Virus record (IMG/VR): IMGVR_UViG_3300020810_001156
Coordinates: 62,001 to 126,000 of that record
Strand: one strand, 5' to 3'
Length of the DNA stretch: 64,000 bases
The position numbers and the translations under genes are program-made. The notes below the pieces were generated by a model. It worked only from the letters and a program-made list of their open reading frames with translations. It was not told where the DNA came from and did no database searches. Of the stretch, positions 3-45,230 are shown one piece after another (the stretch's first letter is position 1; every line of letters starts with the position of its first letter).

Positions 3-236
3 CAAAACGAAAAAGAATTACCCCCACCACCACCAAAACCAGAGGATAAGGCTAATCCATATAAGCCAGTATCTACACCATCTGGTGGCTCTCCTCGTAG
101 AGGTGGCGGAGGTGGAGGCGGAGGCCGAAACGAATTTATAGAAAGAGACGAATTTAATGATTTTGGAGATAGATTCGATGACTTTGGAAGAGATGATAGC
201 ATCCTCAGACCTAATTATGATATAAGACAATTCTAA
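3..236 (+). CDS. 3' end of a gene entering from the left edge (Pro-rich/Gly-rich C-terminal tail)
   Basis: Open frame from base 3 (QNEKELPPPPPKPEDK...RGGGGGGGGRNEF...IRQF) ends at TAA 234-236, which overlaps the next ATG (TAATG). Not in the ORF track because it has no start in the window. Confidence 0.6.
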   Translation, partial: QNEKELPPPPPKPEDKANPYKPVSTPSGGSPRRGGGGGGGGRNEFIERDEFNDFGDRFDDFGRDDSILRPNYDIRQF

Positions 237-6439: not shown

Positions 6440-6448
6440 ATATTTATA
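6440..6448 (+). promoter_or_regulatory. Putative phage late promoter (ATATTTATA)
   Basis: Recurrent motif directly after the terminator, 17 nt before ATG 6466. Confidence 0.6.
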
Positions 6449-25267: not shown

Positions 25268-26409
25268 TGATTTACGATAATTTAATAAAATTAGAGGACA
25301 ATATTAGAGAAGTTAGAAATACTTTTATTTTTAATTTTGTTAGAGGTGCTTATATCGAAGTAAAGGGTTCCCAACCAAAAAACTATAAAGTACAATTTAT
25401 AGACCCAAAAACAAATTATATTCATTTCCAAACAGATATCTCAAATGGGCAGTGGGCAAAATGTAGTATTGAATTTTTTGTTAATTGGAATGTTAAAATT
25501 TGGGAAGGTGATATTTTGGTAGAAGATTATCAATATAATGCTGAAAATAAAAGAGTTTATATAGCATTGGATTCGAAGGCATTGGGTGATACTTTGGCTT
25601 GGGTTCCATATGTTGAGGAGTTTGGTAAACTACATAATTGTAAAATGATAACTTCCACATTTCACAATCATATGTTTGAAAAGCAATACCCAAACATAGA
25701 ATTTGTTGAACCGGGTACAAATGTACATAATTTATATGCTATGTATTCATTAGGGTTATTTTATAATGAAGATAATACATACAAAATGTTAAAACATCCA
25801 TCTAATTTTTTAAATGAACCAATGCAGAAAATGGCAACTGATATATTGGGTATGGATTTTAAGGAAGTTAAACCAAAATTAGTGGATAAACAAATTAAAA
25901 AAGATAATAAACTAATCACTATTGCAATTCATGGAACCGCACAAACAAAGTATTGGAATAATCCAAATGGTTGGCAAGATGTTGTAGATTGGTTAAATGA
26001 TAAAGGATACAAAGTAAAATTATTATCCAGAGAAAACGATGGATATATGGGTAACGAGCATCCTAACGGAATCATTAAACACCCAGAAGGAACATTAGAA
26101 TCAGTTATGGATGAGATGAGAAAATCTAAAGCCTTTATTGGTATTGGTAGTGGATTGAGTTGGTTAAGTTGGGCATTGGGAACTAAGACTGTATTGATTA
26201 GTGGATTCTCATACGATTGGGCAGAAATGGAAGATTGTATTAGAATTGGAACACCTGAAGGAAAATGTAGTGGTTGTTTCAATAGATTGAGATTAGATGC
26301 TGGTGATTGGAATTGGTGTCCTGACCACAAAGAAACTAAAAGACAGTTTGAGTGTACTAAATCCATTACATCAGAAATGGTAATCAAAGAATTGGAAAAG
26401 TTTTTATGA
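25258..26409 (+). CDS. Protein O-heptosyltransferase of the AAH/TibC (autotransporter strand-loop-strand) family
   Basis: KRVYIALDSKALGDTLAW, FIGIGSGLSWLSWALG..TVLISGFS, and the four-Cys iron-finger pattern CSGCFN...WNWCPDHKETKRQFECTKSI characteristic of TibC/AAH. Confidence 0.8.
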   Translation: MVIMIYDNLIKLEDNIREVRNTFIFNFVRGAYIEVKGSQPKNYKVQFIDPKTNYIHFQTDISNGQWAKCSIEFFVNWNVKIWEGDILVEDYQYNAENKRVYIALDSKALGDTLAWVPYVEEFGKLHNCKMITSTFHNHMFEKQYPNIEFVEPGTNVHNLYAMYSLGLFYNEDNTYKMLKHPSNFLNEPMQKMATDILGMDFKEVKPKLVDKQIKKDNKLITIAIHGTAQTKYWNNPNGWQDVVDWLNDKGYKVKLLSRENDGYMGNEHPNGIIKHPEGTLESVMDEMRKSKAFIGIGSGLSWLSWALGTKTVLISGFSYDWAEMEDCIRIGTPEGKCSGCFNRLRLDAGDWNWCPDHKETKRQFECTKSITSEMVIKELEKFL

Positions 26410-26795
26410 AAAAAGTTTGGATAAATGGATGTTTTGATGTTTTACATCATGCTCATTTTAAAATGATTGAATTTGCATCTACTTTTGGTGATTTATTAGT
26501 AATTGGTATTGATTCTGATAAACGAGTAAAAGAGTTAAAAGGAGAAGATAGACCTTTTCATACGCAAGAAGAGAGAAAGTATAACTTAGAAAGAATTAAA
26601 GGAGTAAAAAAAGTAATAATATTTGATTCATCTCATGCATTGGAAGAAATGATAAAATCATATGAACCTGATGTATTTGTAATTGGTTCTGATTATAAAA
26701 ATAAACCAATAGTTGGTGAACAATATGCAAAATCAATTGTTTACTTTAATCGAATGGAAAATTTTAGTACTACAAAGATATTAAGTAATGGGTAG
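26406..26795 (+). CDS. hldC: HldC/RfaE domain II-like heptose-1-phosphate nucleotidyltransferase
   Basis: NGCFDVLHHAH (HxxH), IGIDSDKRVKELKGEDRP, IGSDY, C-terminal FSTT; overlaps both neighbours. Confidence 0.78.
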   Translation: MKKVWINGCFDVLHHAHFKMIEFASTFGDLLVIGIDSDKRVKELKGEDRPFHTQEERKYNLERIKGVKKVIIFDSSHALEEMIKSYEPDVFVIGSDYKNKPIVGEQYAKSIVYFNRMENFSTTKILSNG

Positions 26796-27540
26796 AATAT
26801 TATTAATAGGAGAACAATGTGATGATATCTTTATTTATGGAGATACACCAAGACTTTCACCCGAAGGACCTGCTCCTGTATTTATTCCGAAAAGAGAAGT
26901 TTACAATGGTGGGATGGGAATGAATGTAATGGGTAATTTAATGGCATTGGGGGTTGATGTAGATTTTGAACATCAACAATCTCCAATTACAAAGACAAGG
27001 CACATTCACGAACCATCGAATACCTTACTTCTAAGAATTGATGAGGAATTAAATATTGATAATATAGGTGATAGATTACCTAAGTTAGATTTTTGGGAAT
27101 ATCCAATGGTTGTAGTTTCCGATTACAACAAAGGATTCCTAACCGAAGAAGATATTGCATATATCGGATTCAAGCACCCAAATGTAATTTGTGATACAAA
27201 GAAAAAGTTGGGTGAATGGTGTAAAGATTTGCGATTCATAAAATTAAATCGTTCAGAATTTGAAAATAATAAAGAATTTATTGAAGAAAACGATTGGATT
27301 TTAGAAAAGTTAATAATTACATTAGATAAAGATGGGTGTATGTACAAAGGTACATCATATCCAACTGAACAAGTAGAGATTATGGATATCTCAGGAGCAG
27401 GTGATACTTTTGTAGCAGGATTTGTGAAAGAGTTCTTAGATTCCGAAGATATTCCAAAATCAATACAATTTGGAAATCGTTGTTCAGCACAAGTTGTACA
27501 AAAACGAGGTGTAACAACAATAGATTACGAAAATTTATAA
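26788..27540 (+). CDS. hldA: HldA/RfaE domain I-like heptose-7-phosphate kinase (PfkB family)
   Basis: RLSPEGPAPV, GGMGMNVMGNL, VVVSDYNKGFL, DISGAGDTFVAG, VVQKRGVT. Confidence 0.8.
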   Translation: MGRILLIGEQCDDIFIYGDTPRLSPEGPAPVFIPKREVYNGGMGMNVMGNLMALGVDVDFEHQQSPITKTRHIHEPSNTLLLRIDEELNIDNIGDRLPKLDFWEYPMVVVSDYNKGFLTEEDIAYIGFKHPNVICDTKKKLGEWCKDLRFIKLNRSEFENNKEFIEENDWILEKLIITLDKDGCMYKGTSYPTEQVEIMDISGAGDTFVAGFVKEFLDSEDIPKSIQFGNRCSAQVVQKRGVTTIDYENL

Positions 27541-27545
27541 ATTAT

Positions 27546-27554
27546 ATATTTATA
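27546..27554 (+). promoter_or_regulatory. Putative phage late promoter (ATATTTATA)
   Basis: Recurrent motif 36 nt before ATG 27591. Confidence 0.55.
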
Positions 27555-27590
27555 TATGAATTCAAAACAAATTAATTAATTTAAAGTCAT

Positions 27591-27959
27591 ATGGCAAAAG
27601 AAAGCAAACAACAAATTGAATTACTTACTATTGATTTAGGTGAGAGTACAATCGGTTCTATCAAAGAAAAAAATGCAAAGATTAACGATATCGTTAATGC
27701 ATTTGGTCAAATCTATCTTCGTAAAAAAGAATTAAACGAAGAGTTAGAAAAGTTAGAAACAACTTTACAACAAGCTGAAGCTGATTTTAAAGAATCAAAC
27801 GATGCTTTAAGAGAAGAATTAAGTGCATTGGATAAAGAGTATCCAAGAGGACAGATAAACCTTAAAGAAGGTACACTAACATACAACCCAGCTATCAAAG
27901 AGCAGATGAATCAGCAAAACGCAAATTTAACATCTGATAATATAGAAGTGGTAAAGTAA
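27591..27959 (+). CDS. Small coiled-coil hypothetical protein, paralog of 22739..23011
   Basis: Shared C-terminal YPxGQIxLxxGTxTY motif. Confidence 0.7.
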   Translation: MAKESKQQIELLTIDLGESTIGSIKEKNAKINDIVNAFGQIYLRKKELNEELEKLETTLQQAEADFKESNDALREELSALDKEYPRGQINLKEGTLTYNPAIKEQMNQQNANLTSDNIEVVK

Positions 27960-27967
27960 GAAACCTT

Positions 27968-27976
27968 ATATTTATA
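27968..27976 (+). promoter_or_regulatory. Putative phage late promoter (ATATTTATA)
   Basis: Recurrent motif 28 nt before ATG 28005. Confidence 0.6.
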
Positions 27977-28004
27977 TAGTACAAAGGAAATAGTACTATA
28001 TCAG

Positions 28005-31000
28005 ATGAACGAACTATCTCAATTTTTAGTAGAGAGTATATTAGGAGAAGCGGACAGTGTAGACAACATCGTTGTAGTTTACGCTGGCCGCTTTCAACCT
28101 TTTCATAAAGGTCATTACGCAACCTATTCCCACTTAGTAAAAAAGTTTGGAAAAAACAATGTGTATATCGGTACATCCAACAAAACCGATAATAATAAAT
28201 CCCCATTCAACTTCAAAGAAAAGGTAATGATTATTACCAAAATGTTTGGGATTCCAAAAAACAAAATTGTTCAAGTTAAAAATCCCTATGTACCAACTGA
28301 GGTATTAACGAAGTTTGATAAAGATACAACTGCATTTATTACTGTTGTAGGTAAAAAGGATGCAAGTAGATTAGGTGGTAAGTTTTTTACTCCTTATAAA
28401 GATGGTATCGATTTCGAAGGATACGAAGATAGAGGATATGTTTACATCGCACCCGAAGGTGGTGGGGGTGTAAGTGGAACTGAAGTTCGTAACGGATTAT
28501 CATCAGGTTCAGAAGAAGATAAGAAAAACTTTTTTGTAAAAAGAGCATATCCAAAATTTGATAAAAAGATATTTGATTTCATAACTAACACACTAAATGA
28601 AGAATTTAGTATTTCAAAAGAAATAGTAGAAAATTGGTTAATAGCTGAAGGTAGTGATTTAATCAAAGAGGCATCTAAAGTTTTAGGTTCACAAGAAGTT
28701 GATGATGGTCCAAACTTTTTATTTCCATCGTATGCAATATTCGATAGAGTTTCCCAAAAAAGAGCAGAACAAATTGGATACACTGTTTTATCTCAGATTA
28801 TGAGTGCGGAACTTACTGATATTGACCCACATCCAATTTATCCTGATGGGCCTGTAAAAGCAGTAACTCCATTTCCAGCTGGTGTAGCTGGTAAAACAAC
28901 TGCAACTAACCAAAAGGATTACTATGGTTCAATTGCATATGATAAATGGTGGAAGCATGTAACTCGAACCGCTGGTTTAGTTGGATATTCTTTAATTGAT
29001 TACATTGATTTGGAGGTTGATAGAAAAGAATCAACTAAAGATTTATCACAAGAAAAGAAACCAGTTAGTAACACACTCAAAGAAGATATCAAACTTCCAG
29101 TAAATGTGGGTGATACAATCTTAACGGGTAGATTTAAAAATAAAAAGACAGTTGTTAAAACTATTGGTAAAGATGAACATGGGATGCCAACAATCAATGG
29201 TAGAAAAGTTGTAAACTTTAGAATCTTAAAAGAAGGTGTACAAGTTCAATTGGATGAAATCCCAATGGCTGATTTACAAAAGATTGACCAATATGCAGAT
29301 AAACAGCTTAATCCAGTTGATGTAGTTTTAACCGATAAGCATTTCTTTGATAGATTAACTGACCCAAGAAATAAAAAACCAATATCACCTGCAGAACTAA
29401 TTGGATTCTTTAAAAGATTAGGAAAGAAGAAAAAAGATTTCTTAAACTTCTTACAATTGTACGGACAAATTGTAGCAAAGGATAATAGAAGTAAAATCAA
29501 CATTCCATTTATGAAACAAGCGAATAAAGTAATCGCTAAGACCGTAATGAGAAAAGATGATTTTAAAACACCAGACCCAGAATATAAATTCGAAGGTGTA
29601 AATGATTTCTTCTATATGGATTTCAAAAAATGGGCACATAAAAATAGAGCAAAAATCAATAAAATGGATTATGAAGATAAGATTGAATTCTTATCAGATA
29701 AATACATGAAAGACCACGGAAAGTGGCATAGGGGAGAAAGTCCTGATTATATTGGCGCTGAGTTAGTTCACTTATTGGTAAAAGATAGAATTATCAAAGA
29801 AGGATTGGCAATGGGTTATCCAGACCAAAAATGGTTAGATGACCACGAAAAGAAATTAAAAAAATTAAGAAAGAAATTTGATAAAGAAAAACTTCAGTAT
29901 AATGAACCATTCGCATTAGGTGGTGGTATTACTGAATCATTGATTTTGGAAGGAGGTGCTTATGGACATATGAATCACCCATTCGATACCGAAATCAATT
30001 TAACTTTTGGACAATTAAAAGATATCGTAAATAGAGCTTTAGAGGGTAATTTAGAACTCACTAGAGAAAAGACCGATGGTCAAGCATTAGCAGTTAGTTG
30101 GAGAGATGGGAGATTAGTTGCAGCGAGAAATAAAGGACATTTGAAAAACAAAGGAGCTGGAGCATTAGATATCAATGGTGTAGCGATGAAGTTTGCTGGT
30201 AGAGGAGAATTGGAAAAGGCGTATAACTTCGCAATGAAAGATTTAACGAAGGCAATATCTAAGTTGAGTGAAAAGCAGAGAGATAAGATTTTCAAAGGAG
30301 GAGCATGTTTTATGAATTTGGAGGTAATCTATCCAACTTCTGTTAATGTAATACCTTACGGACAAGCACTATTAGTATTCCACGGAACAATGGAATACAA
30401 TGAGGATGGTATCGCAATTGGTGAGAACCAAGATGCAGCGAGAATGTTGGCAGGTATGATTAAACAAATCAATGCAGATGTTCAATCCGCTTACACAATC
30501 CAAGGCCCACCAGTAGTTCAATTACCTAAATCCAAAAACCTTTCTTCACTCAAAGGAAAGTATAATGGACAAATCTCAAAACTACAATCTAAATTTAAGT
30601 TAAAAGATAACGATGGAATCGCTGATTATCATCAAGCATTTTGGATGGATTTTGTGAATAAGAAATCACCATCTAAGTTAGATAACAAAACTCTAATGGG
30701 ATTAGTAAAGAGATGGGCATTCTATGATAAATCATTCAGATTAGATAATAAGAATATTACTGATGAAAAAACATTAGAATGGGCAAAGGGAATTGATAAG
30801 AATGACCACGCTAAAATGGCTAAAGATAACATCAGACCATTTGAAGATATCTTCTTAGGTTTAGGAGCAGAAGTACTTTCATTTATGAGTTCAGCACTAA
30901 CTGTTAATCCTGATAGTGCAGTTAGAGATATGAAAAAGAGATTAGACCAAACCATTAAAGATGTAAGAAAATCAGGTGACCCTAAGAAAGTAAAAAAACT

Positions 31001-31151
31001 AAAATTAGAATTGGAAAGATTAAATTCTATCGGAGGAAAGAATAAAATTGTTCCAAACGAAGGAATCGTATTTGTGTATGGTGGGAAAACTTTCAAACTA
31101 ACGGGCACATTCGCACCTCTCAATCAGATTCTTGGGTTATTTTACGAATAG
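28005..31151 (+). CDS. Multidomain protein: HIGH-type nucleotidyltransferase + small internal modules + ATP-dependent ligase-like nucleotidyltransferase domain
   Basis: GRFQPFHKGH near the N-terminus; C-terminal domain from about 29952 with EKTDG (motif I KxDG), NEGIVF (motif IV-like) and FKLTG (motif V-like). Confidence 0.65.
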   Translation: MNELSQFLVESILGEADSVDNIVVVYAGRFQPFHKGHYATYSHLVKKFGKNNVYIGTSNKTDNNKSPFNFKEKVMIITKMFGIPKNKIVQVKNPYVPTEVLTKFDKDTTAFITVVGKKDASRLGGKFFTPYKDGIDFEGYEDRGYVYIAPEGGGGVSGTEVRNGLSSGSEEDKKNFFVKRAYPKFDKKIFDFITNTLNEEFSISKEIVENWLIAEGSDLIKEASKVLGSQEVDDGPNFLFPSYAIFDRVSQKRAEQIGYTVLSQIMSAELTDIDPHPIYPDGPVKAVTPFPAGVAGKTTATNQKDYYGSIAYDKWWKHVTRTAGLVGYSLIDYIDLEVDRKESTKDLSQEKKPVSNTLKEDIKLPVNVGDTILTGRFKNKKTVVKTIGKDEHGMPTINGRKVVNFRILKEGVQVQLDEIPMADLQKIDQYADKQLNPVDVVLTDKHFFDRLTDPRNKKPISPAELIGFFKRLGKKKKDFLNFLQLYGQIVAKDNRSKINIPFMKQANKVIAKTVMRKDDFKTPDPEYKFEGVNDFFYMDFKKWAHKNRAKINKMDYEDKIEFLSDKYMKDHGKWHRGESPDYIGAELVHLLVKDRIIKEGLAMGYPDQKWLDDHEKKLKKLRKKFDKEKLQYNEPFALGGGITESLILEGGAYGHMNHPFDTEINLTFGQLKDIVNRALEGNLELTREKTDGQALAVSWRDGRLVAARNKGHLKNKGAGALDINGVAMKFAGRGELEKAYNFAMKDLTKAISKLSEKQRDKIFKGGACFMNLEVIYPTSVNVIPYGQALLVFHGTMEYNEDGIAIGENQDAARMLAGMIKQINADVQSAYTIQGPPVVQLPKSKNLSSLKGKYNGQISKLQSKFKLKDNDGIADYHQAFWMDFVNKKSPSKLDNKTLMGLVKRWAFYDKSFRLDNKNITDEKTLEWAKGIDKNDHAKMAKDNIRPFEDIFLGLGAEVLSFMSSALTVNPDSAVRDMKKRLDQTIKDVRKSGDPKKVKKLKLELERLNSIGGKNKIVPNEGIVFVYGGKTFKLTGTFAPLNQILGLFYE

Positions 31152-31196: not shown

Positions 31197-31868
31197 ATGG
31201 CTGAGAAACAATTCAATAAAAAATTCATGCATCCAACTCGTAGGAAGTTGGTAAATATGATTCAAACTGGTGAGTATGATAAGGATACTCAAATTTCACT
31301 TTCTAATATCAAAGAAACAACTAAAAGAGAAGTTGGTGATATTTGGGAAGAGAATGGTGTAGTTTGGGAACAAAAATCATATGGTAAAGTAAAACAATCA
31401 AAAGCATCTTCAGAATTAGCCTCAGTTAGAAAGTTTTTATCAAAATTAGCTGAATGTAAATCGGAAGATTGTGATAAATTAAAATATGGACCTACTGATA
31501 AAAAGTTAATTAGTAAGACAGGTTATTGTTCTAAGTGCTTATCGGAGAGGGAATCTATTATAAAAAAAGATGGATTGTGGGAAGCTTACAATGAATATAA
31601 AGTGTATTCAAACATGGCGGCGTATGGAACCGAAGTCCTACAAAAATGGAATCTGGCTTTAAATGAAGTTACCAACATTCACGAATATGTGAATGATGAT
31701 GGCTCCATAGAAAAATGGTCATCCAATGAAGATGTACAAACTTTAAAATCTCAAATTGAAACAGATATAGAGAATGGTAAAAAAGAACTTACTGAAGTTA
31801 TTGAAAAGAGAAACGCTGCCTATGAGAAATTAAAAGATAGAAATTATGAGTTGGTTAAAGAAATTTGA
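31197..31868 (+). CDS. Hypothetical protein with a possible Zn-binding Cys cluster
   Basis: CKSEDC...YCSKC; coiled-coil-like C-terminus. Confidence 0.7.
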   Translation: MAEKQFNKKFMHPTRRKLVNMIQTGEYDKDTQISLSNIKETTKREVGDIWEENGVVWEQKSYGKVKQSKASSELASVRKFLSKLAECKSEDCDKLKYGPTDKKLISKTGYCSKCLSERESIIKKDGLWEAYNEYKVYSNMAAYGTEVLQKWNLALNEVTNIHEYVNDDGSIEKWSSNEDVQTLKSQIETDIENGKKELTEVIEKRNAAYEKLKDRNYELVKEI

Positions 31869-32536: not shown

Positions 32537-34117
32537 TTGGCACAAAAGAAATCATTAAAAGAGATTATAGCGGTAGAGTACAAAAAATGTGCTTCTGACC
32601 CTATATACTTTATGAAAAAGTATTGTATGATTCAACATCCGGTGAGAGGAAAAATTCCCTTTCACCTTTTTCCGTTTCAAGAAACTACTTTAACTGATTT
32701 CAAAGACCATAGATATAATATTATTCTTAAATCCAGACAAACTGGTATTTCAACCTTAACTGCTGGATTCTCACTTTGGAAAATGTTATTTAATGATGAT
32801 TACAATGTATTGGTAATTGCAACTAAACAAGAGGTTGCTAAAAACTTAGTAACTAAAGTAAGAGTGATGAATCAGTATCTTCCAAGTTGGTTAAAGTTAA
32901 CAACTGTTGAAGATAACAAACTATCCTTACGATATTCAAATGGTTCACAAATCAAAGCAACTTCAGCAGCAGGAGATGCGGGTCGTTCTGAAGCACTATC
33001 CTTATTGGTATTTGATGAGGCAGCATTTATCGATAAGATTGAAGAGATTTGGGTATCTGCACAATCTACTTTATCAACGGGTGGTTCTGCAATTATCCTT
33101 TCAACACCAAATGGTGTGGGTAACTTCTTCCACAAAACTTGGGTAGGTTCTGAAGATGGAACAAATGGGTTTAATAATATTAGATTACATTGGAGTGTAC
33201 ATCCAGAAAGAGACCAAAGTTGGAGAGATGAACAAGAAACACTATTAGGACCAAAGGGAGCAGCACAAGAATGTGATTGTGATTTTGTGTCTTCTGGTGA
33301 TTCAGTAATTGACCCACAAGTTCTTCAATTCTATAAAGAAACTTATGTACAAGAACCTATTGAAAAGGGTGGGTTCGATGGAAACTTATGGAAATGGCAA
33401 TTTCCCGATTATAATAAATCATATATAGTTGTAGCGGATGTTGCGAGAGGTGATTCATCGGATTACTCAGCAGCCCATGTTATTGATGTTGAAGCATCTG
33501 AACAAGTAGCTGAATATAGAGGTAAGTTAGATACCAAAGATTTTGGTAATTTCTTAGTATCTCTATCAACTGAATATAACAACGCATTGTTAGTAATTGA
33601 GAACGCTAATATTGGTTGGGCAACGATTCAACAAGTTATTGATAGAAACTATGGAAACCTTTATTATATGAGTAAGGATTTAAAGTATGTAGATACTGAA
33701 CATCAACACTCAAATAGATATCGTTCTCAAGATAAAAGTATGGTTGCGGGATTCTCAACCACCTCAAGAACTCGACCTTTAATTGTTTCAAAGTTGGAAG
33801 AGTATATAAGGGAAAAATCAATCATCATTCGTTCAGTTAGAACTATTGATGAATTGTTCACATTTATATGGATGAATGGTAGAGCTGAAGCAATGAGAGG
33901 TTATAACGATGACCTTACAATGTCTTTGGCTATTTCACTTTGGGTGAGGGATACTGCTCTGAGATTGAGACAAGAAGGTATTGATTTAACCAAACAGGCA
34001 ATCAATAGTATTTCATCATATACTTATAGTGGGGTGTATGGTGGAAACGATTCTGATGATAACCCTTGGCAGATGCAAATCGGAGATGATATCGAAGATT
34101 TATCTAAATGGTTATAA
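32537..34117 (+). CDS. gp17: Terminase large subunit (T4 gp17-like)
   Basis: TTG start; KSRQTGIST (Walker A), LLVFDEAAF (Walker B), ILSTPNG, nuclease ADVARG and YNDDL. Confidence 0.93.
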   Translation: MAQKKSLKEIIAVEYKKCASDPIYFMKKYCMIQHPVRGKIPFHLFPFQETTLTDFKDHRYNIILKSRQTGISTLTAGFSLWKMLFNDDYNVLVIATKQEVAKNLVTKVRVMNQYLPSWLKLTTVEDNKLSLRYSNGSQIKATSAAGDAGRSEALSLLVFDEAAFIDKIEEIWVSAQSTLSTGGSAIILSTPNGVGNFFHKTWVGSEDGTNGFNNIRLHWSVHPERDQSWRDEQETLLGPKGAAQECDCDFVSSGDSVIDPQVLQFYKETYVQEPIEKGGFDGNLWKWQFPDYNKSYIVVADVARGDSSDYSAAHVIDVEASEQVAEYRGKLDTKDFGNFLVSLSTEYNNALLVIENANIGWATIQQVIDRNYGNLYYMSKDLKYVDTEHQHSNRYRSQDKSMVAGFSTTSRTRPLIVSKLEEYIREKSIIIRSVRTIDELFTFIWMNGRAEAMRGYNDDLTMSLAISLWVRDTALRLRQEGIDLTKQAINSISSYTYSGVYGGNDSDDNPWQMQIGDDIEDLSKWL

Positions 34118-36848: not shown

Positions 36849-37712
36849 ATGAAGAGGGTAAAACATTCAAAATTTAAGAATACTGGTATTCTATTCGAAC
36901 TTTTGGTGAGGCAAATCACTTTAGAAGTATTGAATGGTGATACTACTGAAAAAGCTAAAAAAATCGTAAGGGAATTTTTTAGCCCAAAAACAGAGTTAAA
37001 CAAAGAGTTAAGATTGTACGAACTTCTTATGAAGGAAAAATATAGTTCAGAATCAAGAGCTGAAAAGTTTATTGATACTGTCAATGAAGCACACAATCGT
37101 ATTGACCAAAAACAACTTCACAAAGAAAAATATAATCTTATCAAAAAGATTAACGAATCGTTCAATATGGATGAATTCCTTTCTTCACCTATTTCTAATT
37201 ATAGAGTTTTGGCATCCATCTATAAGATTTTTGAATCTAAAAAGATGGATAACTATGATGTAAAAGATGTATTCAATTCAAAGATTACCCTCATTGAATC
37301 TATCACATCTAATCCATCTATCAAAACTCAAACAAAAAAAGATACATTAGTTGAAAATTATAAAAAACAAGATAAAGATTTAAGATTACTTACTTATAAA
37401 ATTTTAGTAGAAACTTTTAACAAAAAGTATTCTAATTTAAATGAATCTCAAAAAGCTTTATTAAAAGAATATATCAATAACTTAACAAACACAACTGGAT
37501 TTAAATCATATATACAAAAAGAAATTCCAAATATTGTGAATGAATTAAAATCAATCCAAAAAAATGTTAAAGATAAAGTAACTAAAATTAAGTTGACAGA
37601 AACTATTTCTGTTTTATCTAAAACTAAAATTGGTAAAGTTGTTTCTGATAATCATGTTTCATCTATAATGATGTCATACGAATTAATTAAAGAATTGAAA
37701 GCTAAGATATGA
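36849..37712 (+). CDS. Head-module hypothetical protein
   Basis: 287-aa helical ORF between portal and protease; starts MKRVKHSKFKNTGILFELL. Confidence 0.75.
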   Translation: MKRVKHSKFKNTGILFELLVRQITLEVLNGDTTEKAKKIVREFFSPKTELNKELRLYELLMKEKYSSESRAEKFIDTVNEAHNRIDQKQLHKEKYNLIKKINESFNMDEFLSSPISNYRVLASIYKIFESKKMDNYDVKDVFNSKITLIESITSNPSIKTQTKKDTLVENYKKQDKDLRLLTYKILVETFNKKYSNLNESQKALLKEYINNLTNTTGFKSYIQKEIPNIVNELKSIQKNVKDKVTKIKLTETISVLSKTKIGKVVSDNHVSSIMMSYELIKELKAKI

Positions 37713-38152
37713 AGTTAAGGGAGTTAATTGAAGATTTAATTGCTGAAATTGAGCAAGATGAGTTAGATATTGAAGAGGCTACCACTACTGGTGATGTGGC
37801 TGGTTATAATACCCCTAATGCTTTCAAAGATACTGATGGTACTGATGAAGATGAAGAAAACGATGATAAATTTGTTGATACTATAAATAAAGCAAGTGGT
37901 TACAAAAGAGTTAGTGAAAATCGTTGGTTAGAATTAAAAAAAGATGAATCCACTCCAAAGCAAAAAATTGGTAGAGGGATTTCTAATGTAAACAAACAAC
38001 TTTCTGAAATTGAAACATTCCTAAGATGGTATGGTAGAATTAAAAAAGAAAGTGATTTAAATTCTGACCAATATTGGAAAAGAACACAAAAGAATCTTTT
38101 TAAGATTAGAGAAAGATTAAACACTATTGTAACGCAGATTAGCAAATTATAA
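37709..38152 (+). CDS. Hypothetical (putative internal head) protein
   Basis: Overlaps the previous stop (ATGA); acidic N-terminus MKLRELIEDLIAE. Confidence 0.7.
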   Translation: MKLRELIEDLIAEIEQDELDIEEATTTGDVAGYNTPNAFKDTDGTDEDEENDDKFVDTINKASGYKRVSENRWLELKKDESTPKQKIGRGISNVNKQLSEIETFLRWYGRIKKESDLNSDQYWKRTQKNLFKIRERLNTIVTQISKL

Positions 38153-39241: not shown

Positions 39242-39829
39242 ATGAGAAACCTATTAATAGAAACAAACTTATTTGAAGGAAGGGTGAACGAAGATTCATC
39301 AGGAAGAACTATGGTTAAAGGTATCCTTCAAAGAGCAGGTGCAGAAAACCAAAATGGTAGAGTGTACCCAAAAAATATCTTAGAAAGAGAGATAAACAAA
39401 TATCAACAACTAATCAAAGAAAGAAGAGCATTGGGTGAATTAGACCACCCAGATTCTTCAGTTATCAACTTAAAGAATGTATCACATAATATTAAAGAGG
39501 TACATTGGGAAGGTAACGATGTTGTAGGTACAGTTGAAATCTTACCTACTCCTTCTGGAAATATTCTAAAAGAATTATTAAGAGCTGGAATCCTATTAGG
39601 TATCTCATCAAGAGGTATGGGTTCTACTCAACCAATGAAAGATAACAAACTTTTAGTTGGTGAAGATTTTGAACTAATCGGTTGGGATTTTGTTTCCAAC
39701 CCATCTACACATGGTGCATTTATGACTCCAATGAACGAATCGGTAATCAAACAAATTGGTACTGATGTTTGTGGAAATTTTTGTAAAGCACAAGATTTAA
39801 TGAGAGAAATTATAACGGAGTTAGCATAA
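39242..39829 (+). CDS. gp21: Prohead core protease (T4 gp21-like)
   Basis: NQNGRVYP, ALGELDHP (catalytic His), LGISSRGMGS (catalytic Ser), DFVSNPS. Confidence 0.92.
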   Translation: MRNLLIETNLFEGRVNEDSSGRTMVKGILQRAGAENQNGRVYPKNILEREINKYQQLIKERRALGELDHPDSSVINLKNVSHNIKEVHWEGNDVVGTVEILPTPSGNILKELLRAGILLGISSRGMGSTQPMKDNKLLVGEDFELIGWDFVSNPSTHGAFMTPMNESVIKQIGTDVCGNFCKAQDLMREIITELA

Positions 39830-40381: not shown

Positions 40382-41314
40382 ATGATTAAACTAACTGATT
40401 TATTAGAAGCTGAGAAAGCATTCACCGCAACAAGCAAAGAAACTGGTAATGTATCAGTATTCAAAACCAAAGCAGCTAGAGATGCTGCTGTAAAAGCTGG
40501 TTCTCACGAAAAAAGAAAAACTGATAAAGATGATGCAGTAGATGTACCAACTGGAGAGAAGAAACCAAATATGTTCTCTAAAGATACTGGATACGATGCA
40601 CCTGATGCAAAATCAGATGATACTCCAAAAGTAACTCCAAGAAAAGCAAACAAAGTATTAGTTAAGACTGTTGATAAATTCTCAGAAAGGTTAGGATTAA
40701 CTCCTGATAAGTTAGGTAAGGAAGATTATGAAAAGAAAATGCTAACTTTGGTACATGATGCATTAGAAGATGCAAACTTCCATTCAGCAAACAGACAAAT
40801 CTTCGCTGATTTATATGGTAAGCCGGAATTAGCAAAAAGACCTGATTACTCCGAAGCTCCTGAATTTGGAACACCTGAAAGAGATGAGTGGGAAGAAAAA
40901 AACTCTATCTATGGTAAAAGATTTGATTCAGCAACATCAAACTTTGATGATTCGGATGAAATGGTTGGGGCAATCACTTCACAAGCTTCTTGGGATGGAC
41001 AACTTACTATTGATGCTATCTTAGATAAAATGAGAAGAGATGGTTCTAATGAATTAGCAGATAAAATCCAATCATCTTTTGATAAGGATATGGAAAATAA
41101 TGAAGGTACAATTAAACTAACTGATTTATTAAAAGAAGGTAAATTCAAAAAAGAAGAAAGAGATTTAAAAAACATTGCAGGTACAGTAAAAATTGATTTT
41201 GAAGAAGCACTTGAAATGTTAGAAGAAGATGGTGTTTTGGAAGCAATGGAACATTTAGAAAACGCTATTGAAAGAATTCAATATGTTCATAAACAATTAA
41301 AAAGAAAATCATAA
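40382..41314 (+). CDS. Putative internal head protein with a duplicated IKLTDLL(K)E leader motif
   Basis: MIKLTDLLE at the N-terminus and TIKLTDLLKE near residue 243. Confidence 0.7.
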   Translation: MIKLTDLLEAEKAFTATSKETGNVSVFKTKAARDAAVKAGSHEKRKTDKDDAVDVPTGEKKPNMFSKDTGYDAPDAKSDDTPKVTPRKANKVLVKTVDKFSERLGLTPDKLGKEDYEKKMLTLVHDALEDANFHSANRQIFADLYGKPELAKRPDYSEAPEFGTPERDEWEEKNSIYGKRFDSATSNFDDSDEMVGAITSQASWDGQLTIDAILDKMRRDGSNELADKIQSSFDKDMENNEGTIKLTDLLKEGKFKKEERDLKNIAGTVKIDFEEALEMLEEDGVLEAMEHLENAIERIQYVHKQLKRKS

Positions 41315-43613: not shown

Positions 43614-45230
43614 ATGGCAAATTTTGATTTATCTAAACTAATGGAAGGCAAAAACCCTCAGTCAGTTATGTTGGCTGAAACTAGACAATTAAAGTCTAAG
43701 TGGGAAAATACAGGTCTTCTTGAAGGTTTAAATGAGAAAGAGCAAGGCGCAATGTCTGTTCTTTTAGAAAACCAAGCAAAACAATTGCTTGATGAAGCAT
43801 CACAAACTGGTGTTGCTAATAACTCTGAAGAGTGGAGCGGTGTAGCTTTACCTTTAGTAAGAAGAATCTTTGGTGAGATTGCTTCTAAAGAATTCGTTAG
43901 TGTACAACCTATGAACTTACCTTCTGGACTTGTATTCTATCTTGATTTCAAATATGGTACTGCGCAAGGTGGTAACCCAGCATTCTCTGGAAAATCTCTT
44001 TTCGGTGGTGATGGTTCGGATGTAGGTTCAACTAATGTTGCTGAAAACGGTCTTTACGGAGATGGTAGATTCGGATACTCTGCAAATGATGTAACTGCTT
44101 CTATCGCTGTAGGTGATATCACATTCGCTTCAGCTTCTTGGGCAGAGGTAGGATTTGACGCTTCTTTATCACAATCAATTTCTGATGGTGAAATCGCTAA
44201 ACTTACTTTCGCTGCTCCTGCAACTGCTGATTTAGATGGTGCTAACTCTTTCAACATCTCTGATGATGAAATCGTAACTACTATCAACCAATTCAACGGT
44301 GCTGCTGGTTCTAACTTAGTAATGTTCGTATCTGCATCTGCTGGATATGGTACATCTGCTGCAGATTTCGCTATCTTAACTTACTCAGTAGTTCCTGCTG
44401 ATTACTCAAGAGGTGATTTCGAAGATGGAATGAACACTGGTAAAGTTGCTGGTTCTGGTACTTTCGGTACTGATATCGATATCCCAGAAGTTGACTTAGA
44501 ATTGAAATCTGAAGCAATTGTTGCTAAGACTAGAAAGTTAAAGGCTGTGTGGACTCCTGAGTTGGCGCAAGACCTTAACGCTTACCACTCAATCGATGCT
44601 GAAGCTGAATTAACTTCTATGTTATCTGATTACATCTCATTAGAGATTGATTTAGAAATCTTAGATATGTTAAAGTCTAACGCATTGACTACTGAGTACT
44701 GGTCAGCTACAATCGGTGAGGAGTACAACTCTTCAACTGGTGTATGGTCTGCTGGAACTGCTGGTGTTGCATACCAAAAGAACACTTGGTTCCAAACTTT
44801 AGGTACTAAATTAAACAAAGTATCTAATAAGATTCACCAATTAACATTAAGAGGTGGAGCTAACTTTGTAGTAGCATCTCCTGATGTATGTACTATCTTA
44901 GAATCAATCCCTGGATTTACTGTTTCAGCTGATAAAGATGCAATGTCTTTCGCTGCTGGTGTAACTTCAGTAGGTGCGATTGCTAACAGATACACAGTTT
45001 ACAAAAACCCTTATATGACTTCTAACGAAATCTTATTAGGATTTAGAGGAAGCAACTTCCTAGAAACTGGTGCTGTTTACGCTCCGTATGTACCACTTAT
45101 TATGACTCCATTAGTGTATGACCCAACTAACTTCACTCCAAGAAGAGGTGTTATGACGAGATACGCTAAGAAGATGGTAAGACCTGAGTACTATGGTAAG
45201 ATTTATGTTAAAGATTTAGCATCTATCTAA
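43614..45230 (+). CDS. gp23: Major capsid protein (T4 gp23-like)
   Basis: LPLVRR, VSVQPMNLPSGLVFYLDF, AKTRKLKAVWTPELAQDLNAYH.IDAEAEL, YAPYVPL, RRGVMTRYA. Confidence 0.95.
   Translation: MANFDLSKLMEGKNPQSVMLAETRQLKSKWENTGLLEGLNEKEQGAMSVLLENQAKQLLDEASQTGVANNSEEWSGVALPLVRRIFGEIASKEFVSVQPMNLPSGLVFYLDFKYGTAQGGNPAFSGKSLFGGDGSDVGSTNVAENGLYGDGRFGYSANDVTASIAVGDITFASASWAEVGFDASLSQSISDGEIAKLTFAAPATADLDGANSFNISDDEIVTTINQFNGAAGSNLVMFVSASAGYGTSAADFAILTYSVVPADYSRGDFEDGMNTGKVAGSGTFGTDIDIPEVDLELKSEAIVAKTRKLKAVWTPELAQDLNAYHSIDAEAELTSMLSDYISLEIDLEILDMLKSNALTTEYWSATIGEEYNSSTGVWSAGTAGVAYQKNTWFQTLGTKLNKVSNKIHQLTLRGGANFVVASPDVCTILESIPGFTVSADKDAMSFAAGVTSVGAIANRYTVYKNPYMTSNEILLGFRGSNFLETGAVYAPYVPLIMTPLVYDPTNFTPRRGVMTRYAKKMVRPEYYGKIYVKDLASI

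What the first reader, a model, noticed from the sequence alone, without database searches (positions are those of the whole stretch)
28005..31151. Putative head-packaged polyprotein joining a HIGH nucleotidyltransferase and a ligase-like enzyme
Seen: the N-terminus MNELSQFLVESILGE resembles a head-targeting leader. An NMNAT/cytidylyltransferase-like domain, four small modules and a KxDG ligase-like domain are separated by LNE, IAE, LKE, IKE, ITE and ILE sites, and the gene follows a late-type promoter. Established: T4 gp21 cleaves after [ILV]-x-E and processes internal proteins. Inference: a polyprotein cut inside the prohead and injected with the DNA, delivering nucleotide-cofactor or RNA-repair activities, possibly against NAD-depleting or RNA-cleaving host defences.
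Basis: partly seen in the sequence, partly recalled or inferred. Interest (0 to 1): 0.6.

Follow-up and report, generated by a model that had tools for sequence, protein, structure and literature searches.

The report
Phage RNA-repair polyprotein with protease-site junctions
A 1048-residue gene of an uncultured T4-type marine phage joins an NMNAT-like enzyme, five small modules and a previously unannotated RNA-ligase-like enzyme through short linkers that look like cutting sites of the phage's own head protease, so it may be an RNA-repair kit packed into the virus head and injected with the DNA.

Summary
The N-terminus is a HIGH nucleotidyltransferase (Pfam PF01467; HxGH and SGTxxR motifs; nearest solved relatives are NMNATs). 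The C-terminal 400 residues have no Pfam, PHROG or PDB sequence match. They fold confidently (pLDDT 89.5) into a covalent nucleotidyltransferase whose best structural matches are RNA ligases, and K689-x-D-G, E773, E1019-G1020 and K1031 are invariant. In related phages this ligase sits in, or is fused to, a CCA-adding enzyme, an HD phosphoesterase and a P-loop kinase, which makes it an RNA-repair set.

The plain [ILV]xE count is at chance (14 vs 12.3). The sites, however, lie at homology-defined module borders. Across the family, Glu at P1 and a hydrophobic P3 precede unrelated modules (66/67, 191/216, 29/34). The phage has a gp21-type S77 protease. The gene lies just upstream of terminase, portal and protease in 6 of 6 loci. 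Distant NMNAT-like homologues with the same 10-residue leader were detected in four cyanophage virion proteomes.

Processing and injection remain unproven (about 0.5). The canonical T4 late promoter is absent; a different phage promoter-like motif is present. NAD-salvage partners are absent.

The parts
27966..27979 (+). Phage promoter-like motif (core TATTTATA at 27969-27976), 36 nt upstream of the start codon
   Evidence: There are 41 copies in the 252.6-kb genome, 32 of them in the 5.3% non-coding DNA, mostly within about 60 nt upstream of + strand starts (also before 27591, 34145, 36849, 45361, 63340). It is not the T4 late TATAAATA.
28005..31151 (+). The 1048-aa ORF (P0001)
   Evidence: An 85%-identical full-length homologue (P0123) and 5205 related cluster representatives exist.
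28005..28049 (+). 15-residue N-terminal leader with two Phi-x-E sites (LVE 8-10, LGE 13-15); candidate capsid-targeting / propeptide sequence
   Evidence: It is conserved at residue 8 in many family members. The same type of leader occurs on the virion-detected cyanophage homologues S-CREM2 gp154 and S-SZBM1_140. Its function is inferred.
28050..28592 (+). HIGH-motif nucleotidyltransferase domain (res 16-196), NMNAT-like; HxGH at 28101-28115, SGTEVR at 28473-28490
   Evidence: PF01467 E 2.7e-7; NCBIfam NMNAT families match only over about 60 residues, far below their cut-offs; PDB 2qjt and 1f9a; phrog_395 and phrog_3041 cytidyltransferase.
28593..28670 (+). Linker 1 (res 197-222) with four Phi-x-E sites (LNE, IVE, IAE, IKE)
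   Evidence: Many homologues' N-domain alignments end at 197-216. Mel-JY01 joins the N-domain directly to the ligase here through IIAE|GG.
28653..29054 (+). Module A (res 217-350), unknown function; usually travels with the N-domain
   Evidence: BLAST segment ends. The AF2 model is low-confidence. There were no Pfam or Atlas leads.
29085..29225 (+). Module B (res 361-407), a highly mobile ~47-residue small beta domain (GDTxLxG(K/R)FKNKK)
   Evidence: This is the only middle part with pLDDT above 80. 67 distinct instances were found at varied positions. Glu is at P1 in 66/67 and L/I/V at P3 in 42/67.
29259..29594 (+). Module C (res 419-530), unknown function; matches phrog_23027
   Evidence: It also occurs in Flavobacterium phage immuto, Melnitz and Sinorhizobium phiM12-type phages. 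Glu is at P1 in 29/34 instances.
29607..29795 (+). Module D (res 535-597), unknown function, poorly conserved
29796..29924 (+). Module E (res 598-640), helical 'GYPDQKW...KKLRK' element
   Evidence: In contig L005 it is the C-terminus of the separate HD protein encoded just before the ligase gene.
29928..29951 (+). Junction ITESLILE (res 642-649) immediately before the ligase domain
   Evidence: Family-wide, Glu is at P1 in 191/216, L/I at P3 in 180/185 and a hydrophobic residue at P4. In the model this segment has pLDDT below 50.
29952..31148 (+). RNA-ligase-like covalent nucleotidyltransferase domain (res 650-1048). GHMNHP 654-659; motif I K689-T-D-G (30069-30080); R708; E773; E1019-G1020; K1031. 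A ~170-residue helical insert lies between motifs IIIa and IV.
   Evidence: AF2 pLDDT 89.5, pTM 0.85. VIA Z 8.9-8.0 with about 185 residues aligned to NgrRnl, T4 Rnl1 and Trl1; in the exhaustive search of 48,161 chains 15 of the top 16 hits belong to the ligase/capping superfamily. Invariant columns are listed. There is no Pfam, PHROG or PDB sequence hit.
31197..31868 (+). Conserved downstream 223-aa ORF; its relatives in L005 and LR756508 carry paired CxxC motifs. Function unknown.
   Evidence: A ~195-220-aa ORF directly follows the ligase gene in L012, L013, L014 and LR756508, and lies nearby in L005. Those of L005, L013 and LR756508 resemble the window ORF by eye; no alignment was run.
37709..38152 (+). 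147-aa acidic ORF between portal and protease (the position of T4 gp67/gp68), leader MKLRELIEDLIAE
   Evidence: Besides the finding itself, it is one of only two ORFs in the genome with the composite motif in its first 20 residues. Equivalent ORFs in relatives also start with several Phi-x-E sites.
39242..39829 (+). Prohead protease, T4 gp21 family
   Evidence: PF03420 Peptidase_S77 E 3.7e-29; phrog_207 E 6e-53.
40382..41314 (+). 310-aa head-cluster ORF with the shared leader MIKLTDLLE; its residues 7-76 also occur as a module inside a family polyprotein
   Evidence: 56% identity to P0236 residues 150-214; the leader is shared with three other ORFs of the genome.
43614..45230 (+). Major capsid protein (gp23 type) with six Phi-x-E sites in its first 61 residues
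   Evidence: PF07068 E 2.3e-76, with the profile starting at residue 72. Sites are listed.

Best explanation
The ORF is a real modular protein of an uncultured ~253-kb T4-type phage.

Shown:
- It joins (i) a HIGH-motif, NMNAT-like nucleotidyltransferase, (ii) five small modules of unknown function and (iii) a divergent ligase-type covalent nucleotidyltransferase closest in fold to RNA ligases (Rnl5, Rnl1, Trl1), with all catalytic motifs invariant.
- The family belongs to a phage RNA-repair gene set. In relatives the ligase is operonic or fused with a CCA-adding enzyme, an HD phosphoesterase and an AAA_33 kinase, and the NMNAT-like domain is fused to HD plus the CCA-adding enzyme.
- The same genome carries a second fusion of this kind: CCA-adding enzyme + HD + DUF5661.

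Inferred mechanism:
1. The protein is made with the head genes.
2. Its 10-15-residue leader takes it into the prohead core.
3. The gp21-type S77 protease cuts it after Glu at the conserved Phi-x-E junctions.
4. The released enzymes leave with the DNA, so that RNA sealing (lysyl-AMP at K689, then 5'-adenylylated RNA, then the phosphodiester) and a nucleotidyl-transfer activity are present in the next host from the first minute. This would counter tRNA- or RNA-cleaving defences.

My odds by step: domain identities about 0.9; RNA-repair role about 0.75; virion association about 0.55; internal cleavage at the junctions about 0.5.
For: Domains: N-domain; ligase fold and invariant K/D/G, E, EG, K.

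RNA-repair context:
- L005 has overlapping genes for PolyA_pol/CCA, an AAA_33 kinase (E 2e-25), HD and the standalone ligase.
- L013 has a 1004-aa CTP_transf + HD + PolyA_pol protein followed by the ligase.
- P0038 is an HD-ligase fusion. P0166, P0169, P0142 and P0134 align to the own genome's CCA+HD fusion protein and also carry the ligase domain.
- The own genome encodes a 705-aa CCA + HD + DUF5661 protein.

Processing and packaging:
- The S77 protease, T4-type portal and gp23 are in the window.
- The composite junction motif occurs 141 times vs 24 +/- 5.6 expected.
- Glu at P1 and a hydrophobic P3 precede three unrelated modules.
- The sites lie in low-pLDDT linkers.
- Standalone ligases start with a 15-residue leader MIRLxxILNEVLLKE|GG.
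- Four ORFs of this genome share the leader MI[KR]L[TD][DE][IL]L, one of them in the head cluster. N-terminal 10-mers are similar in 11 ORF pairs vs 1 at internal offsets.
- Head-cluster ORFs 40382 and 41324 share modules with family polyproteins.
- The gene lies 2-6 genes upstream of terminase, portal and protease in the window, L005, L012, L013, L014 and Mel-JY01.
- All 5 phage records carrying family modules encode S77.

Literature:
- gp21-family proteases cut after Glu at X-x-E, and T4 capsid-targeting sequences are 10-20-residue propeptides (PMC5694885).
- T4 internal proteins are diverse and share only that targeting sequence (PMC3012670).
- NMNAT-like / cytidylyltransferase proteins were detected in virion proteomes of S-CREM2, S-SZBM1, S-SCSM1 and S-CBWM1 (PMC10665884, PMC9146016, PMC9602691).
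- S-CREM2 gp154 and S-SZBM1_140 are distant homologues of the N-domain (pairwise BLASTP E 1e-6 and 7e-6) and start MKNFSSFLTE|A and MRFRQFIIE|A.
Against: - There is no proteomic, transcript-timing or biochemical datum for this protein or for any ligase-domain family member.
- The plain Phi-x-E count in the protein is at chance.
- 25 of 216 ligase junctions carry C, M or A instead of Glu. Part of the 'LLxEGG' element may therefore simply be the start of the ligase fold.
- Glu before modules B and C could be the first conserved residue of each module.
- The own genome's CCA + HD fusion and the HD protein of L005 lack a leader.
- Healing-and-sealing enzymes are often natural fusions that work uncut (Trl1; Runella HD-Pnk, PMC6097658).
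- The cyanophage virion proteins are only 26-29% identical over about 95 residues, are not encoded next to head genes in S-SZBM1 or S-CREM2, and their authors note that carry-over of abundant proteins is possible (PMC9602691).
- phiM12 gp159, which carries module C, is not labelled a virion protein, whereas gp157 two genes upstream is.
- The ligase fold match is middling (Z about 8-9; Foldseek E 7e-3).
Confidence: 0.5

Rival explanations
1. It is an uncut, cytoplasmic multi-domain RNA-repair enzyme. The modules act together as one polypeptide, as in Trl1 or Pnkp. The Phi-x-E elements are amphipathic linker or docking helices, or the conserved first residues of each module, carried along when neighbouring genes fuse and split.
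For: - Fusion and fission of the same enzymes occur across relatives, with 4-nt overlapping genes in L005.
- The junction at 205-224 is predicted helical.
- 12% of ligase junctions lack Glu.
- Some partner enzymes lack a leader.
- The plain site count is at chance.
- Known bacterial HD-Pnk/ligase clusters work in the cytoplasm (PMC6097658), as do jumbo-phage RNA-repair sets (PMC7824862).
Against: - It does not explain why three unrelated modules share Glu at P1 with a hydrophobic P3 while P2 and P4-P8 vary.
- It does not explain why unrelated small proteins, including a head-cluster ORF, share a 9-10-residue leader.
- It does not explain why the gene keeps its place beside terminase and portal in 6 of 6 loci.
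- It does not explain why NMNAT-like homologues with this leader turn up in four virion proteomes.
Confidence: 0.3
2. It is packaged largely intact. The leader targets the protein to the prohead and is removed, but the internal junctions are not cut, so a ~115-kDa multi-enzyme is injected, like T4 Alt.
For: - The leader evidence and the cyanophage virion data (PMC10665884, PMC9146016, PMC9602691).
- Large uncut head proteins are known (discussion of polyvalent proteins, PMC5512222).
- Internal sites may be shielded; the 205-224 region is predicted helical.
Against: Junction conservation is as strong internally as at the N-terminus. The junctions fall in low-confidence, probably exposed linkers.
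Confidence: 0.12
3. Its main role is NAD+ replenishment against NAD-depleting defences: the N-domain is a true NMN adenylyltransferase, and the rest is accessory.
For: - The best sequence matches of the first ~60-80 residues are NadM/archaeal NMNATs.
- The HxGH and SGTxxR motifs are present.
- Authors of the cyanophage proteome papers interpret their virion proteins as NMNATs (PMC9602691).
Against: - Scores are far below the NMNAT equivalog cut-offs: 35 bits vs 127-181.
- Full-length similarity is to the uncharacterised cyanophage 'cytitidyltransferase' group rather than to NadM.
- No Nampt-family gene is in the genome.
- The domain is consistently linked to RNA-end enzymes.
Confidence: 0.15
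4. The C-terminal domain is a DNA ligase or a capping-type guanylyltransferase rather than an RNA ligase.
For: It has the same superfamily fold and motifs. DNA ligases and capping enzymes appear at Z 5-7.
Against: - RNA ligases of five families rank first in every search.
- There is no OB domain after motif V; the protein ends 17 residues later.
- The neighbours are RNA-end enzymes (CCA-adding enzyme, HD, kinase).
Confidence: 0.08

Closest known systems
T4 RNA repair: Rnl1 (gp63) with Pnkp; phage and jumbo-phage RNA-repair sets (PMC7824862)
   Same: A ligase-type nucleotidyltransferase fold with KxDG, E, EG and K motifs. It is associated with a 5'-kinase, a 3'-phosphoesterase and a CCA-adding enzyme. 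The presumed role is repair of tRNA cut by host nucleases.
   Different: There is no detectable sequence similarity to any Rnl family (no Pfam or PDB sequence hit). A ~170-residue helical insert lies between motifs IIIa and IV, in place of a C-terminal specificity domain. An extra invariant GHxxHP element precedes motif I. The healing enzyme is an HD protein, not a DxDxT phosphatase. The gene lies beside head genes and is fused to an NMNAT-like domain.
Runella slithyformis HD-Pnk / ligase / Tpt1 repair cluster (PMC6097658)
   Same: An HD phosphoesterase, a P-loop kinase and an ATP-dependent ligase-like protein are encoded by overlapping genes.
   Different: That cluster is bacterial. It includes Tpt1 and MTase-HIT genes; no Tpt1 is present here. 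It has no NMNAT-like or CCA-adding partner and no leader or junction motifs.
T4 internal proteins and Alt: capsid-targeting sequence plus gp21 processing (PMC3012670, PMC5694885)
   Same: A gp21-family protease is present. Short N-terminal leaders ending in hydrophobic-x-Glu are shared by otherwise unrelated proteins. The gene sits in the head-gene region.
   Different: T4 cargo proteins are single small proteins or a single enzyme. Here the candidate cargo is a chain of enzymes with candidate internal cut sites. Neither targeting nor cleavage has been shown.
Polyvalent proteins of phages and conjugative elements (PMC5512222)
   Same: Many domains sit in one polypeptide. The architecture is shuffled extensively between relatives. 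The genes lie beside portal and terminase genes. Delivery with the DNA is predicted.
   Different: None of the signature domains (MuF, ArdC, zincin peptidase, ART) is in the window protein. That survey did not find RNA ligases in such proteins. The proposed release mechanism here is the prohead protease, not a built-in peptidase. Among relatives, one carries a sub-threshold ParB_N hit and one an HExxH motif seen by eye.
NMNAT-like / cytidylyltransferase virion proteins of T4-like cyanophages (S-CREM2 gp154, S-SZBM1_140, S-SCSM1 ORF91; PMC10665884, PMC9146016, PMC9602691)
   Same: A HIGH nucleotidyltransferase with the same kind of 9-10-residue leader (…FLxE|A). The two proteins examined here (S-CREM2 gp154, S-SZBM1_140) end in a region that by eye resembles a small beta module. 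The host phages are T4-type with gp21-type proteases.
   Different: They are only 26-29% identical over about 95 residues and are 286-362 aa long with no ligase domain. In those genomes they are not encoded next to the head genes.

Membership tests
Covalent nucleotidyltransferase superfamily (ATP-dependent ligases / capping enzymes) | Motif I KxDG with an invariant lysine | tested here: met
   K689-T-D-G. K, D and G are invariant in 41 sequences down to 39% identity.
Covalent nucleotidyltransferase superfamily (ATP-dependent ligases / capping enzymes) | Motifs III (E), IV (EG) and V (K) in order after motif I | tested here: met
   E773, E1019-G1020 and K1031 are invariant. From the ends of the aligned ranges, K1031 falls on NgrRnl K326 and T4 Rnl1 K240/K242; this mapping is inferred from the ranges, not from a residue-level alignment.
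Covalent nucleotidyltransferase superfamily (ATP-dependent ligases / capping enzymes) | Nucleotidyltransferase fold | tested here: met
   Model pLDDT 89.5. VIA Z 8.3-8.9 with 183-213 residues aligned. 15 of the top 16 of 48,161 chains belong to this superfamily. The Z values are middling, so the call rests on fold and motifs together.
Covalent nucleotidyltransferase superfamily (ATP-dependent ligases / capping enzymes) | Match to a curated sequence family of ligases | tested here: not met
   Pfam, NCBIfam and PHROGs give no ligase hit; searches of PDB sequences with the whole protein and with profiles of the ligase-domain alignments give none either.
Covalent nucleotidyltransferase superfamily (ATP-dependent ligases / capping enzymes) | Formation of a lysyl-AMP intermediate and strand sealing | not testable with these tools
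   Needs an [alpha-32P]ATP labelling assay and ligation assays.
Rnl1-type tRNA repair ligase (T4 gp63) | C-terminal helical tRNA-specificity domain after motif V | tested here: not met
   The protein ends 17 residues after K1031. A helical insert (about res 845-1015) lies before motif IV instead.
NMN adenylyltransferase (NadM / archaeal type) | HxGH and ISxTxxR nucleotide-binding motifs | tested here: met
   FHKGH at 33-37 and SGTEVR at 157-162.
NMN adenylyltransferase (NadM / archaeal type) | Full-length match above the curated equivalog cut-off | tested here: not met
   The best scores are 35.2 bits vs a cut-off of 127 (NF002243) and 32.8 vs 181 (TIGR01527). Only residues about 23-90 align.
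NMN adenylyltransferase (NadM / archaeal type) | NAD-salvage partner (Nampt/NadV) in the genome | tested here: not met
   PF04095 is absent from the 252.6-kb record.
T4-type head cargo (capsid-targeting leader, gp21 processing) | The phage encodes a gp21-family (S77) prohead protease | tested here: met
   39242-39829, PF03420 E 3.7e-29.
T4-type head cargo (capsid-targeting leader, gp21 processing) | A 10-20-residue N-terminal leader ending hydrophobic-x-Glu, shared by unrelated proteins | tested here: met
   LVE at 8-10 and LGE at 13-15. The leader type is conserved in the family and in cyanophage homologues. A second shared leader occurs on 4 ORFs of the genome.
T4-type head cargo (capsid-targeting leader, gp21 processing) | Presence in virions and cleavage after Glu | not testable with these tools
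   Only indirect evidence exists: NMNAT-like homologues appear in four cyanophage virion proteomes (PMC10665884, PMC9146016, PMC9602691).
T4-type head cargo (capsid-targeting leader, gp21 processing) | Late expression | tested here: inconclusive
   The gene lies on the same strand as the head genes and shares a promoter-like motif with them. The motif's timing is unknown, and it is not the T4 late consensus.
Polyvalent proteins (Iyer et al. 2017) | Many domains in one polypeptide, with variable architectures among relatives | tested here: met
   Relatives of 390-1985 aa carry shuffled modules.
Polyvalent proteins (Iyer et al. 2017) | Signature domains (MuF, ArdC-N, zincin peptidase, ParB, ART) | tested here: not met
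   None is in the window protein. There is a weak ParB_N hit (20.7 bits vs 26.3) in the LR756508 relative and an HExxH motif, seen by eye, in L005's 887-aa protein.

The most novel reading that the evidence does not exclude
A clade of marine T4-type phages packs a whole RNA-repair kit into the head as polyproteins and leader-tagged proteins: RNA ligase, NMNAT-like nucleotidyltransferase and, in relatives, a CCA-adding enzyme, an HD phosphoesterase and a kinase. The prohead maturation protease doubles as the polyprotein-processing enzyme by cutting at Phi-x-E junctions. Repair of host-cleaved tRNA could then start on injection, before any phage gene is expressed.
Probability: 0.35. Interest if true: 0.85.

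Novelty: new variant of a known kind. Interest (0 to 1): 0.66.

Why it matters
The C-terminal domain defines a large ligase-like family: 5205 cluster representatives at E <= 1e-3 for the whole protein, and 1665 hits for the ligase domain alone. No Pfam, PHROG or PDB sequence search recognises it, so it is currently annotated as hypothetical or, through its fusion partner, as 'cytidyltransferase'.

Its fusions and operons reveal an RNA-repair system in abundant uncultured marine phages. They also tie the NMNAT-like proteins already seen in cyanophage virions to RNA-end chemistry rather than, or as well as, NAD supply.

If the junctions are protease sites, this would be the first case I know of in which a tailed-phage head protease processes an enzyme polyprotein for delivery. 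It would also be the first case of RNA-repair enzymes acting as injected counter-defence. Both claims can be tested directly with a cultured relative.

Tried and rejected
- Sequence searches of the ligase domain returned no ligase: Pfam, PHROGs, phmmer against PDB, and two hmmsearch profiles against PDB.
- The AF2 model of residues 196-650 came out poor (pLDDT 57.9). Its Foldseek matches (T4 lysozyme at E about 0.5-1) are meaningless and were discarded.
- The Atlas feature search of module A gave nothing. The Atlas fold library was unavailable.
- The T4 late promoter TATAAATA is at chance level and is not on the sense strand upstream.
- I considered that NAD made by the N-domain feeds a Tpt1 2'-phosphotransferase, as in the Runella cluster. 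No Tpt1 (PF01885) is in the genome.
- NAD salvage: no Nampt-family gene.
- An AAA_33 kinase is not found in the window's own genome, although it is present in relatives.
- A possible Walker A motif in module A (GVAGKT) does not fit GxxxxGK[ST], and its Lys is not conserved, so it was rejected by inspection (consensus).
- hhalign of the ligase alignment against the 953-aa 'cytitidyltransferase' of cyanophage ACG-2014f gave probability 0.1, so they are unrelated.
- No paper on Mel-JY01 is in the library.
- The polyvalent-protein survey does not cover this family.
- I did not use the sequencing-run or complex-prediction tools.

Full report
**What is there.** The window is bases 62001-126000 of a 252,603-bp IMG/VR virus record. 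The ORF at 28005-31151 (+) encodes 1048 residues starting MNELSQFLVESILGE.

The phage is T4-type in its head genes:
- terminase, 32537-34117;
- T4-type portal PF07230, 35004-36764;
- gp21-family prohead protease PF03420 (E 3.7e-29), 39242-39829;
- gp23 capsid protein PF07068, 43614-45230.

So the premise that a gp21-like protease is available holds.

**The N-terminal enzyme.** Residues about 16-196 match Pfam CTP_transf_like (E 2.7e-7, above the cut-off) and the PHROG cytidyltransferase families.
- The nearest named relatives are NadM/archaeal NMNATs. Only residues about 23-90 align, and the scores are far below the equivalog cut-offs (35 bits vs 127-181).
- Both nucleotide-binding motifs are present: FHKGH at 33-37 and SGTEVR at 157-162.
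- Over its full length the domain resembles the uncharacterised 'cytitidyltransferase' of T4-like cyanophages better: 26% identity over residues 22-214.
- The genome has no Nampt-family gene and three other CTP_transf_like ORFs.

I therefore call it a HIGH nucleotidyltransferase of NMNAT type with unproven substrate.

**The C-terminal enzyme.** Residues 650-1048 have no Pfam, PHROG or PDB sequence match, even with profiles.
- With a 41-sequence alignment the domain folds at pLDDT 89.5, pTM 0.85.
- Foldseek's top PDB matches are all RNA ligases, but they are weak (E 7e-3).
- VIA-align gives Z 8.9-8.0 over about 185 residues to Naegleria Rnl5, T4 Rnl1 and fungal Trl1.
- In an exhaustive comparison with 48,161 chains, 15 of the top 16 belong to the ligase/capping superfamily, with RNA ligases first.
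- Z near 8 is middling on its own. The call rests on the fold together with the invariant columns K689, D691, G692 (motif I), R708, E773, E1019-G1020 and K1031.
- Going by the aligned ranges, K1031 falls on the motif V lysines of NgrRnl and T4 Rnl1; this is inferred from the ranges, not from a residue-level alignment.
- Three features are unusual: an invariant GHxxHP element before motif I, a ~170-residue helical insert before motif IV, and no domain after motif V.

**Family and context.**
- phmmer of the whole protein finds 5205 cluster representatives (868 at E <= 1e-30). Most of the best hits are 600-1985-aa proteins with this ligase domain at the very C-terminus and variable modules in front.
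- The word search with the ligase domain alone finds 1665 proteins. Many are standalone ~414-aa forms. Others carry DUF5661, HD, DUF3008 or cupin add-ons.
- In a syntenic 189-kb contig (L005) the ligase is the last of four overlapping genes: PolyA_pol/CCA-adding enzyme, AAA_33 kinase (E 2e-25), HD, then ligase. An 887-aa N-domain protein precedes them.
- In L013 a 1004-aa protein joins the NMNAT-like domain, HD and PolyA_pol and is followed by the ligase.
- Four large ligase-bearing relatives (P0166, P0169, P0142, P0134) also align to the own genome's CCA + HD protein.
- The window's own genome has a 705-aa CCA-adding + HD + DUF5661 protein at genome position 249111-251228.

This is the healing, sealing and CCA-restoring logic already described for phage and bacterial RNA repair (PMC7824862, PMC6097658). 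RNA repair is thus the best-supported role, and the NMNAT-like domain belongs to that set.

**The junctions.**
- The protein's 14 [ILV]xE sites are no more than chance predicts (12.3 +/- 3.0).
- Twelve of them lie in the leader or at module borders defined independently from homologue alignments. These modules are the N-domain 1-~197/215, A 217-350, B 361-407, C 419-530, D 535-597, E 598-640 and the ligase from 650.
- Seven of the ten sites in the middle region fall in the model's low-confidence segments (pLDDT < 50), which I take to be flexible linkers; the stretch just before the ligase domain is also low-confidence.
- A composite motif recurs at residues 8, 207 and 642 (LVESILGE, IVENWLIAE, ITESLILE). 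Across 149 family representatives it occurs 141 times against 24 +/- 5.6 in shuffles.
- Three unrelated modules are preceded by Glu at P1 and a hydrophobic P3, with variable P2:

| Module | Glu at P1 | Hydrophobic P3 |
|---|---|---|
| B | 66/67 | L/I/V 42/67 |
| Ligase | 191/216 | L/I 180/185 |
| C | 29/34 | L/I/M/V 23/34 |

- This is the specificity known for gp21-family proteases, which cut after Glu at X-x-E (PMC5694885).
- Caveat: 25 of 216 ligase junctions carry C, M or A instead of Glu. Glu could also simply be the first conserved residue of a module.

**Leaders.**
- Standalone ligases begin MIRLxxILNEVLLKE|GG.
- In this genome four unrelated ORFs share MI[KR]L[TD][DE][IL]L. One is the 310-aa ORF 40382-41314, which lies between the protease and the scaffold-like gene.
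- Similar N-terminal 10-mers occur in 11 ORF pairs against 1 at internal offsets; the other pairs are mostly signal-peptide-like or shared-domain N-termini.
- Residues 7-76 of ORF 40382, and the DUF3008 start of ORF 41324, also occur as modules inside family polyproteins.
- The acidic 147-aa ORF at 37709, in the position of T4 gp67/68, starts MKLRELIEDLIAE. It is one of only two other ORFs in the genome with the composite motif in the first 20 residues.
- In the huge phage LR756500 the standalone ligase and two neighbours share the leader MKF(L/I)..YE.FLN.
- Diverse proteins that share only a short leader are what defines T4's capsid-targeted internal proteins (PMC3012670).

**Position.** In the window, L005, L012, L013, L014 and Mel-JY01 the ligase gene lies 2-6 genes upstream of the terminase, which is followed by the portal and, where the locus reaches far enough, the S77 protease. 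All five phage records that hold family modules encode S77, though the base rate among large myoviruses is high.

**Promoter.** The T4 late consensus is not upstream on the sense strand and is at chance level in the window. The sense strand reads TTATATTTATAT 36 nt before the start. This motif occurs 41 times in the genome, 32 of them in the 5.3% non-coding DNA. It also stands before 27591, 34145, 36849, 45361 and 63340. It is a credible phage promoter shared with head-region genes, but its timing is unknown.

**Evidence from relatives' virions.**
- BFVD matches to the ligase model include a weak, distant hit to a cytidyltransferase-like protein of cyanophage S-PM2 (E 6.7e-5).
- Published proteomes of CsCl-purified T4-like cyanophages list a 'cytidylyltransferase' in S-CREM2 (gp154; PMC10665884) and in S-SZBM1 (gene 140; PMC9146016).
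- They also list an NMNAT in S-SCSM1 and in S-CBWM1. [quoted passage not shown]
- I fetched gp154 and gene 140. They are distant homologues of the N-domain (pairwise E 1e-6 and 7e-6, 26-29% identity). They start MKNFSSFLTE|A and MRFRQFIIE|A, the same kind of leader as here.
- This is the only experimental support for head association. It concerns the N-domain family, not the ligase.

**Verdict.**
- The enzyme assignments are right, and the ligase assignment is now much firmer.
- RNA repair is the supported function. NAD replenishment is not supported by gene content.
- The polyprotein-in-the-head mechanism is the best single explanation of the junction motifs, shared leaders, gene position and cyanophage proteomes, but it is still inference. 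I put it at about 0.5.
- The main rival is an uncut cytoplasmic fusion enzyme, at about 0.3.
- The middle modules remain unassigned. The model of residues 196-650 was poor, and only module B is predicted confidently, as a small beta domain.

Noticed in passing
whole genome; in the window at 6441, 7410, 27547, 27969, 34131, 36791, 45324, 63313 (sense-strand TATTTATA): The promoter-like motif TTATATTTATAT occurs 41 times in the genome. 32 copies lie in the 5.3% non-coding DNA, mostly within about 60 nt upstream of + strand start codons. It differs from the T4 late consensus.
   Followed up: partly
window 40382-41314; outside the window at genome 209865-211127 (three consecutive ORFs of 82, 225 and 112 aa): Four unrelated ORFs share the N-terminal leader MI[KR]L[TD][DE][IL]L. 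This is the same leader as on standalone ligases of relatives. The 225-aa ORF is homologous to an internal part of a 1264-aa family polyprotein.
   Followed up: partly
outside the window: genome 249111-251228 (L008:274-2391): A 705-aa fusion of a CCA-adding enzyme, HD, DUF5661 and a basic module, with Phi-x-E at each junction (YLNEGLKE, DISE, DIEE). It is a second polyprotein of the same system.
   Followed up: partly
window 31197-31868: An ORF of ~195-220 aa follows the ligase gene, directly or nearby, in most loci examined. Those of L005, L013 and LR756508 resemble the window's 223-aa ORF by eye, and the L005 and LR756508 ones carry paired CxxC motifs. Pfam gives only a sub-threshold hit.
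   Followed up: no
window 41324-42208: A 294-aa ORF inside the head-gene cluster begins with DUF3008 (E 7e-15). The same domain is fused in front of the ligase in P0070.
   Followed up: partly
window 48811-63297, 13880-22288 and 236-4459: Giant ORFs of 4828, 2802 and 1407 aa. The 1407-aa ORF has no Pfam hit; the other two were not scanned. The 4828-aa ORF follows the neck/tail genes.
   Followed up: no
window 23084-27540: A sugar/LPS-type gene block: a 727-aa glycosyltransferase-methyltransferase fusion, a heptosyltransferase-like GT9, and a split RfaE-like pair (cytidylyltransferase-like 26406-26795 and PfkB kinase 26788-27540) directly upstream of the finding.
   Followed up: no
window 9281-12412: A 1043-aa fusion of a calcineurin-like phosphoesterase and an AAA_23/SMC_N ATPase (SbcD-SbcC-like in one polypeptide). 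It is syntenic in L005 and L012.
   Followed up: no
L005:4837-7500 (related 189-kb contig): The 887-aa N-domain protein of this relative contains an HExxH motif (LHELAH) and a CxxC...CxxC zinc-ribbon-like stretch between modules. This could be a built-in metallopeptidase, like those of polyvalent proteins. It was seen by eye only.
   Followed up: no
family proteins P0139, P0158, P0186, P0201 and others (ligase junction): In 25 of 216 ligase junctions the residue before GG is Cys, Met or Ala instead of Glu (LLLC|GG, LLLM|GG). This marks a divergent subgroup that the cleavage model does not explain.
   Followed up: partly
outside the window: genome about 25,000-31,000 (ORFs at window-relative -36828 to -31110): Several ORFs start with signal peptides of the form MKKLL...(S/F)(Y/F/A)(G/A)Q. 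From my own knowledge these are reminiscent of Bacteroidota secreted proteins. Together with 32% G+C and matches to Flavobacterium phages, this hints at a flavobacterial host.
   Followed up: no
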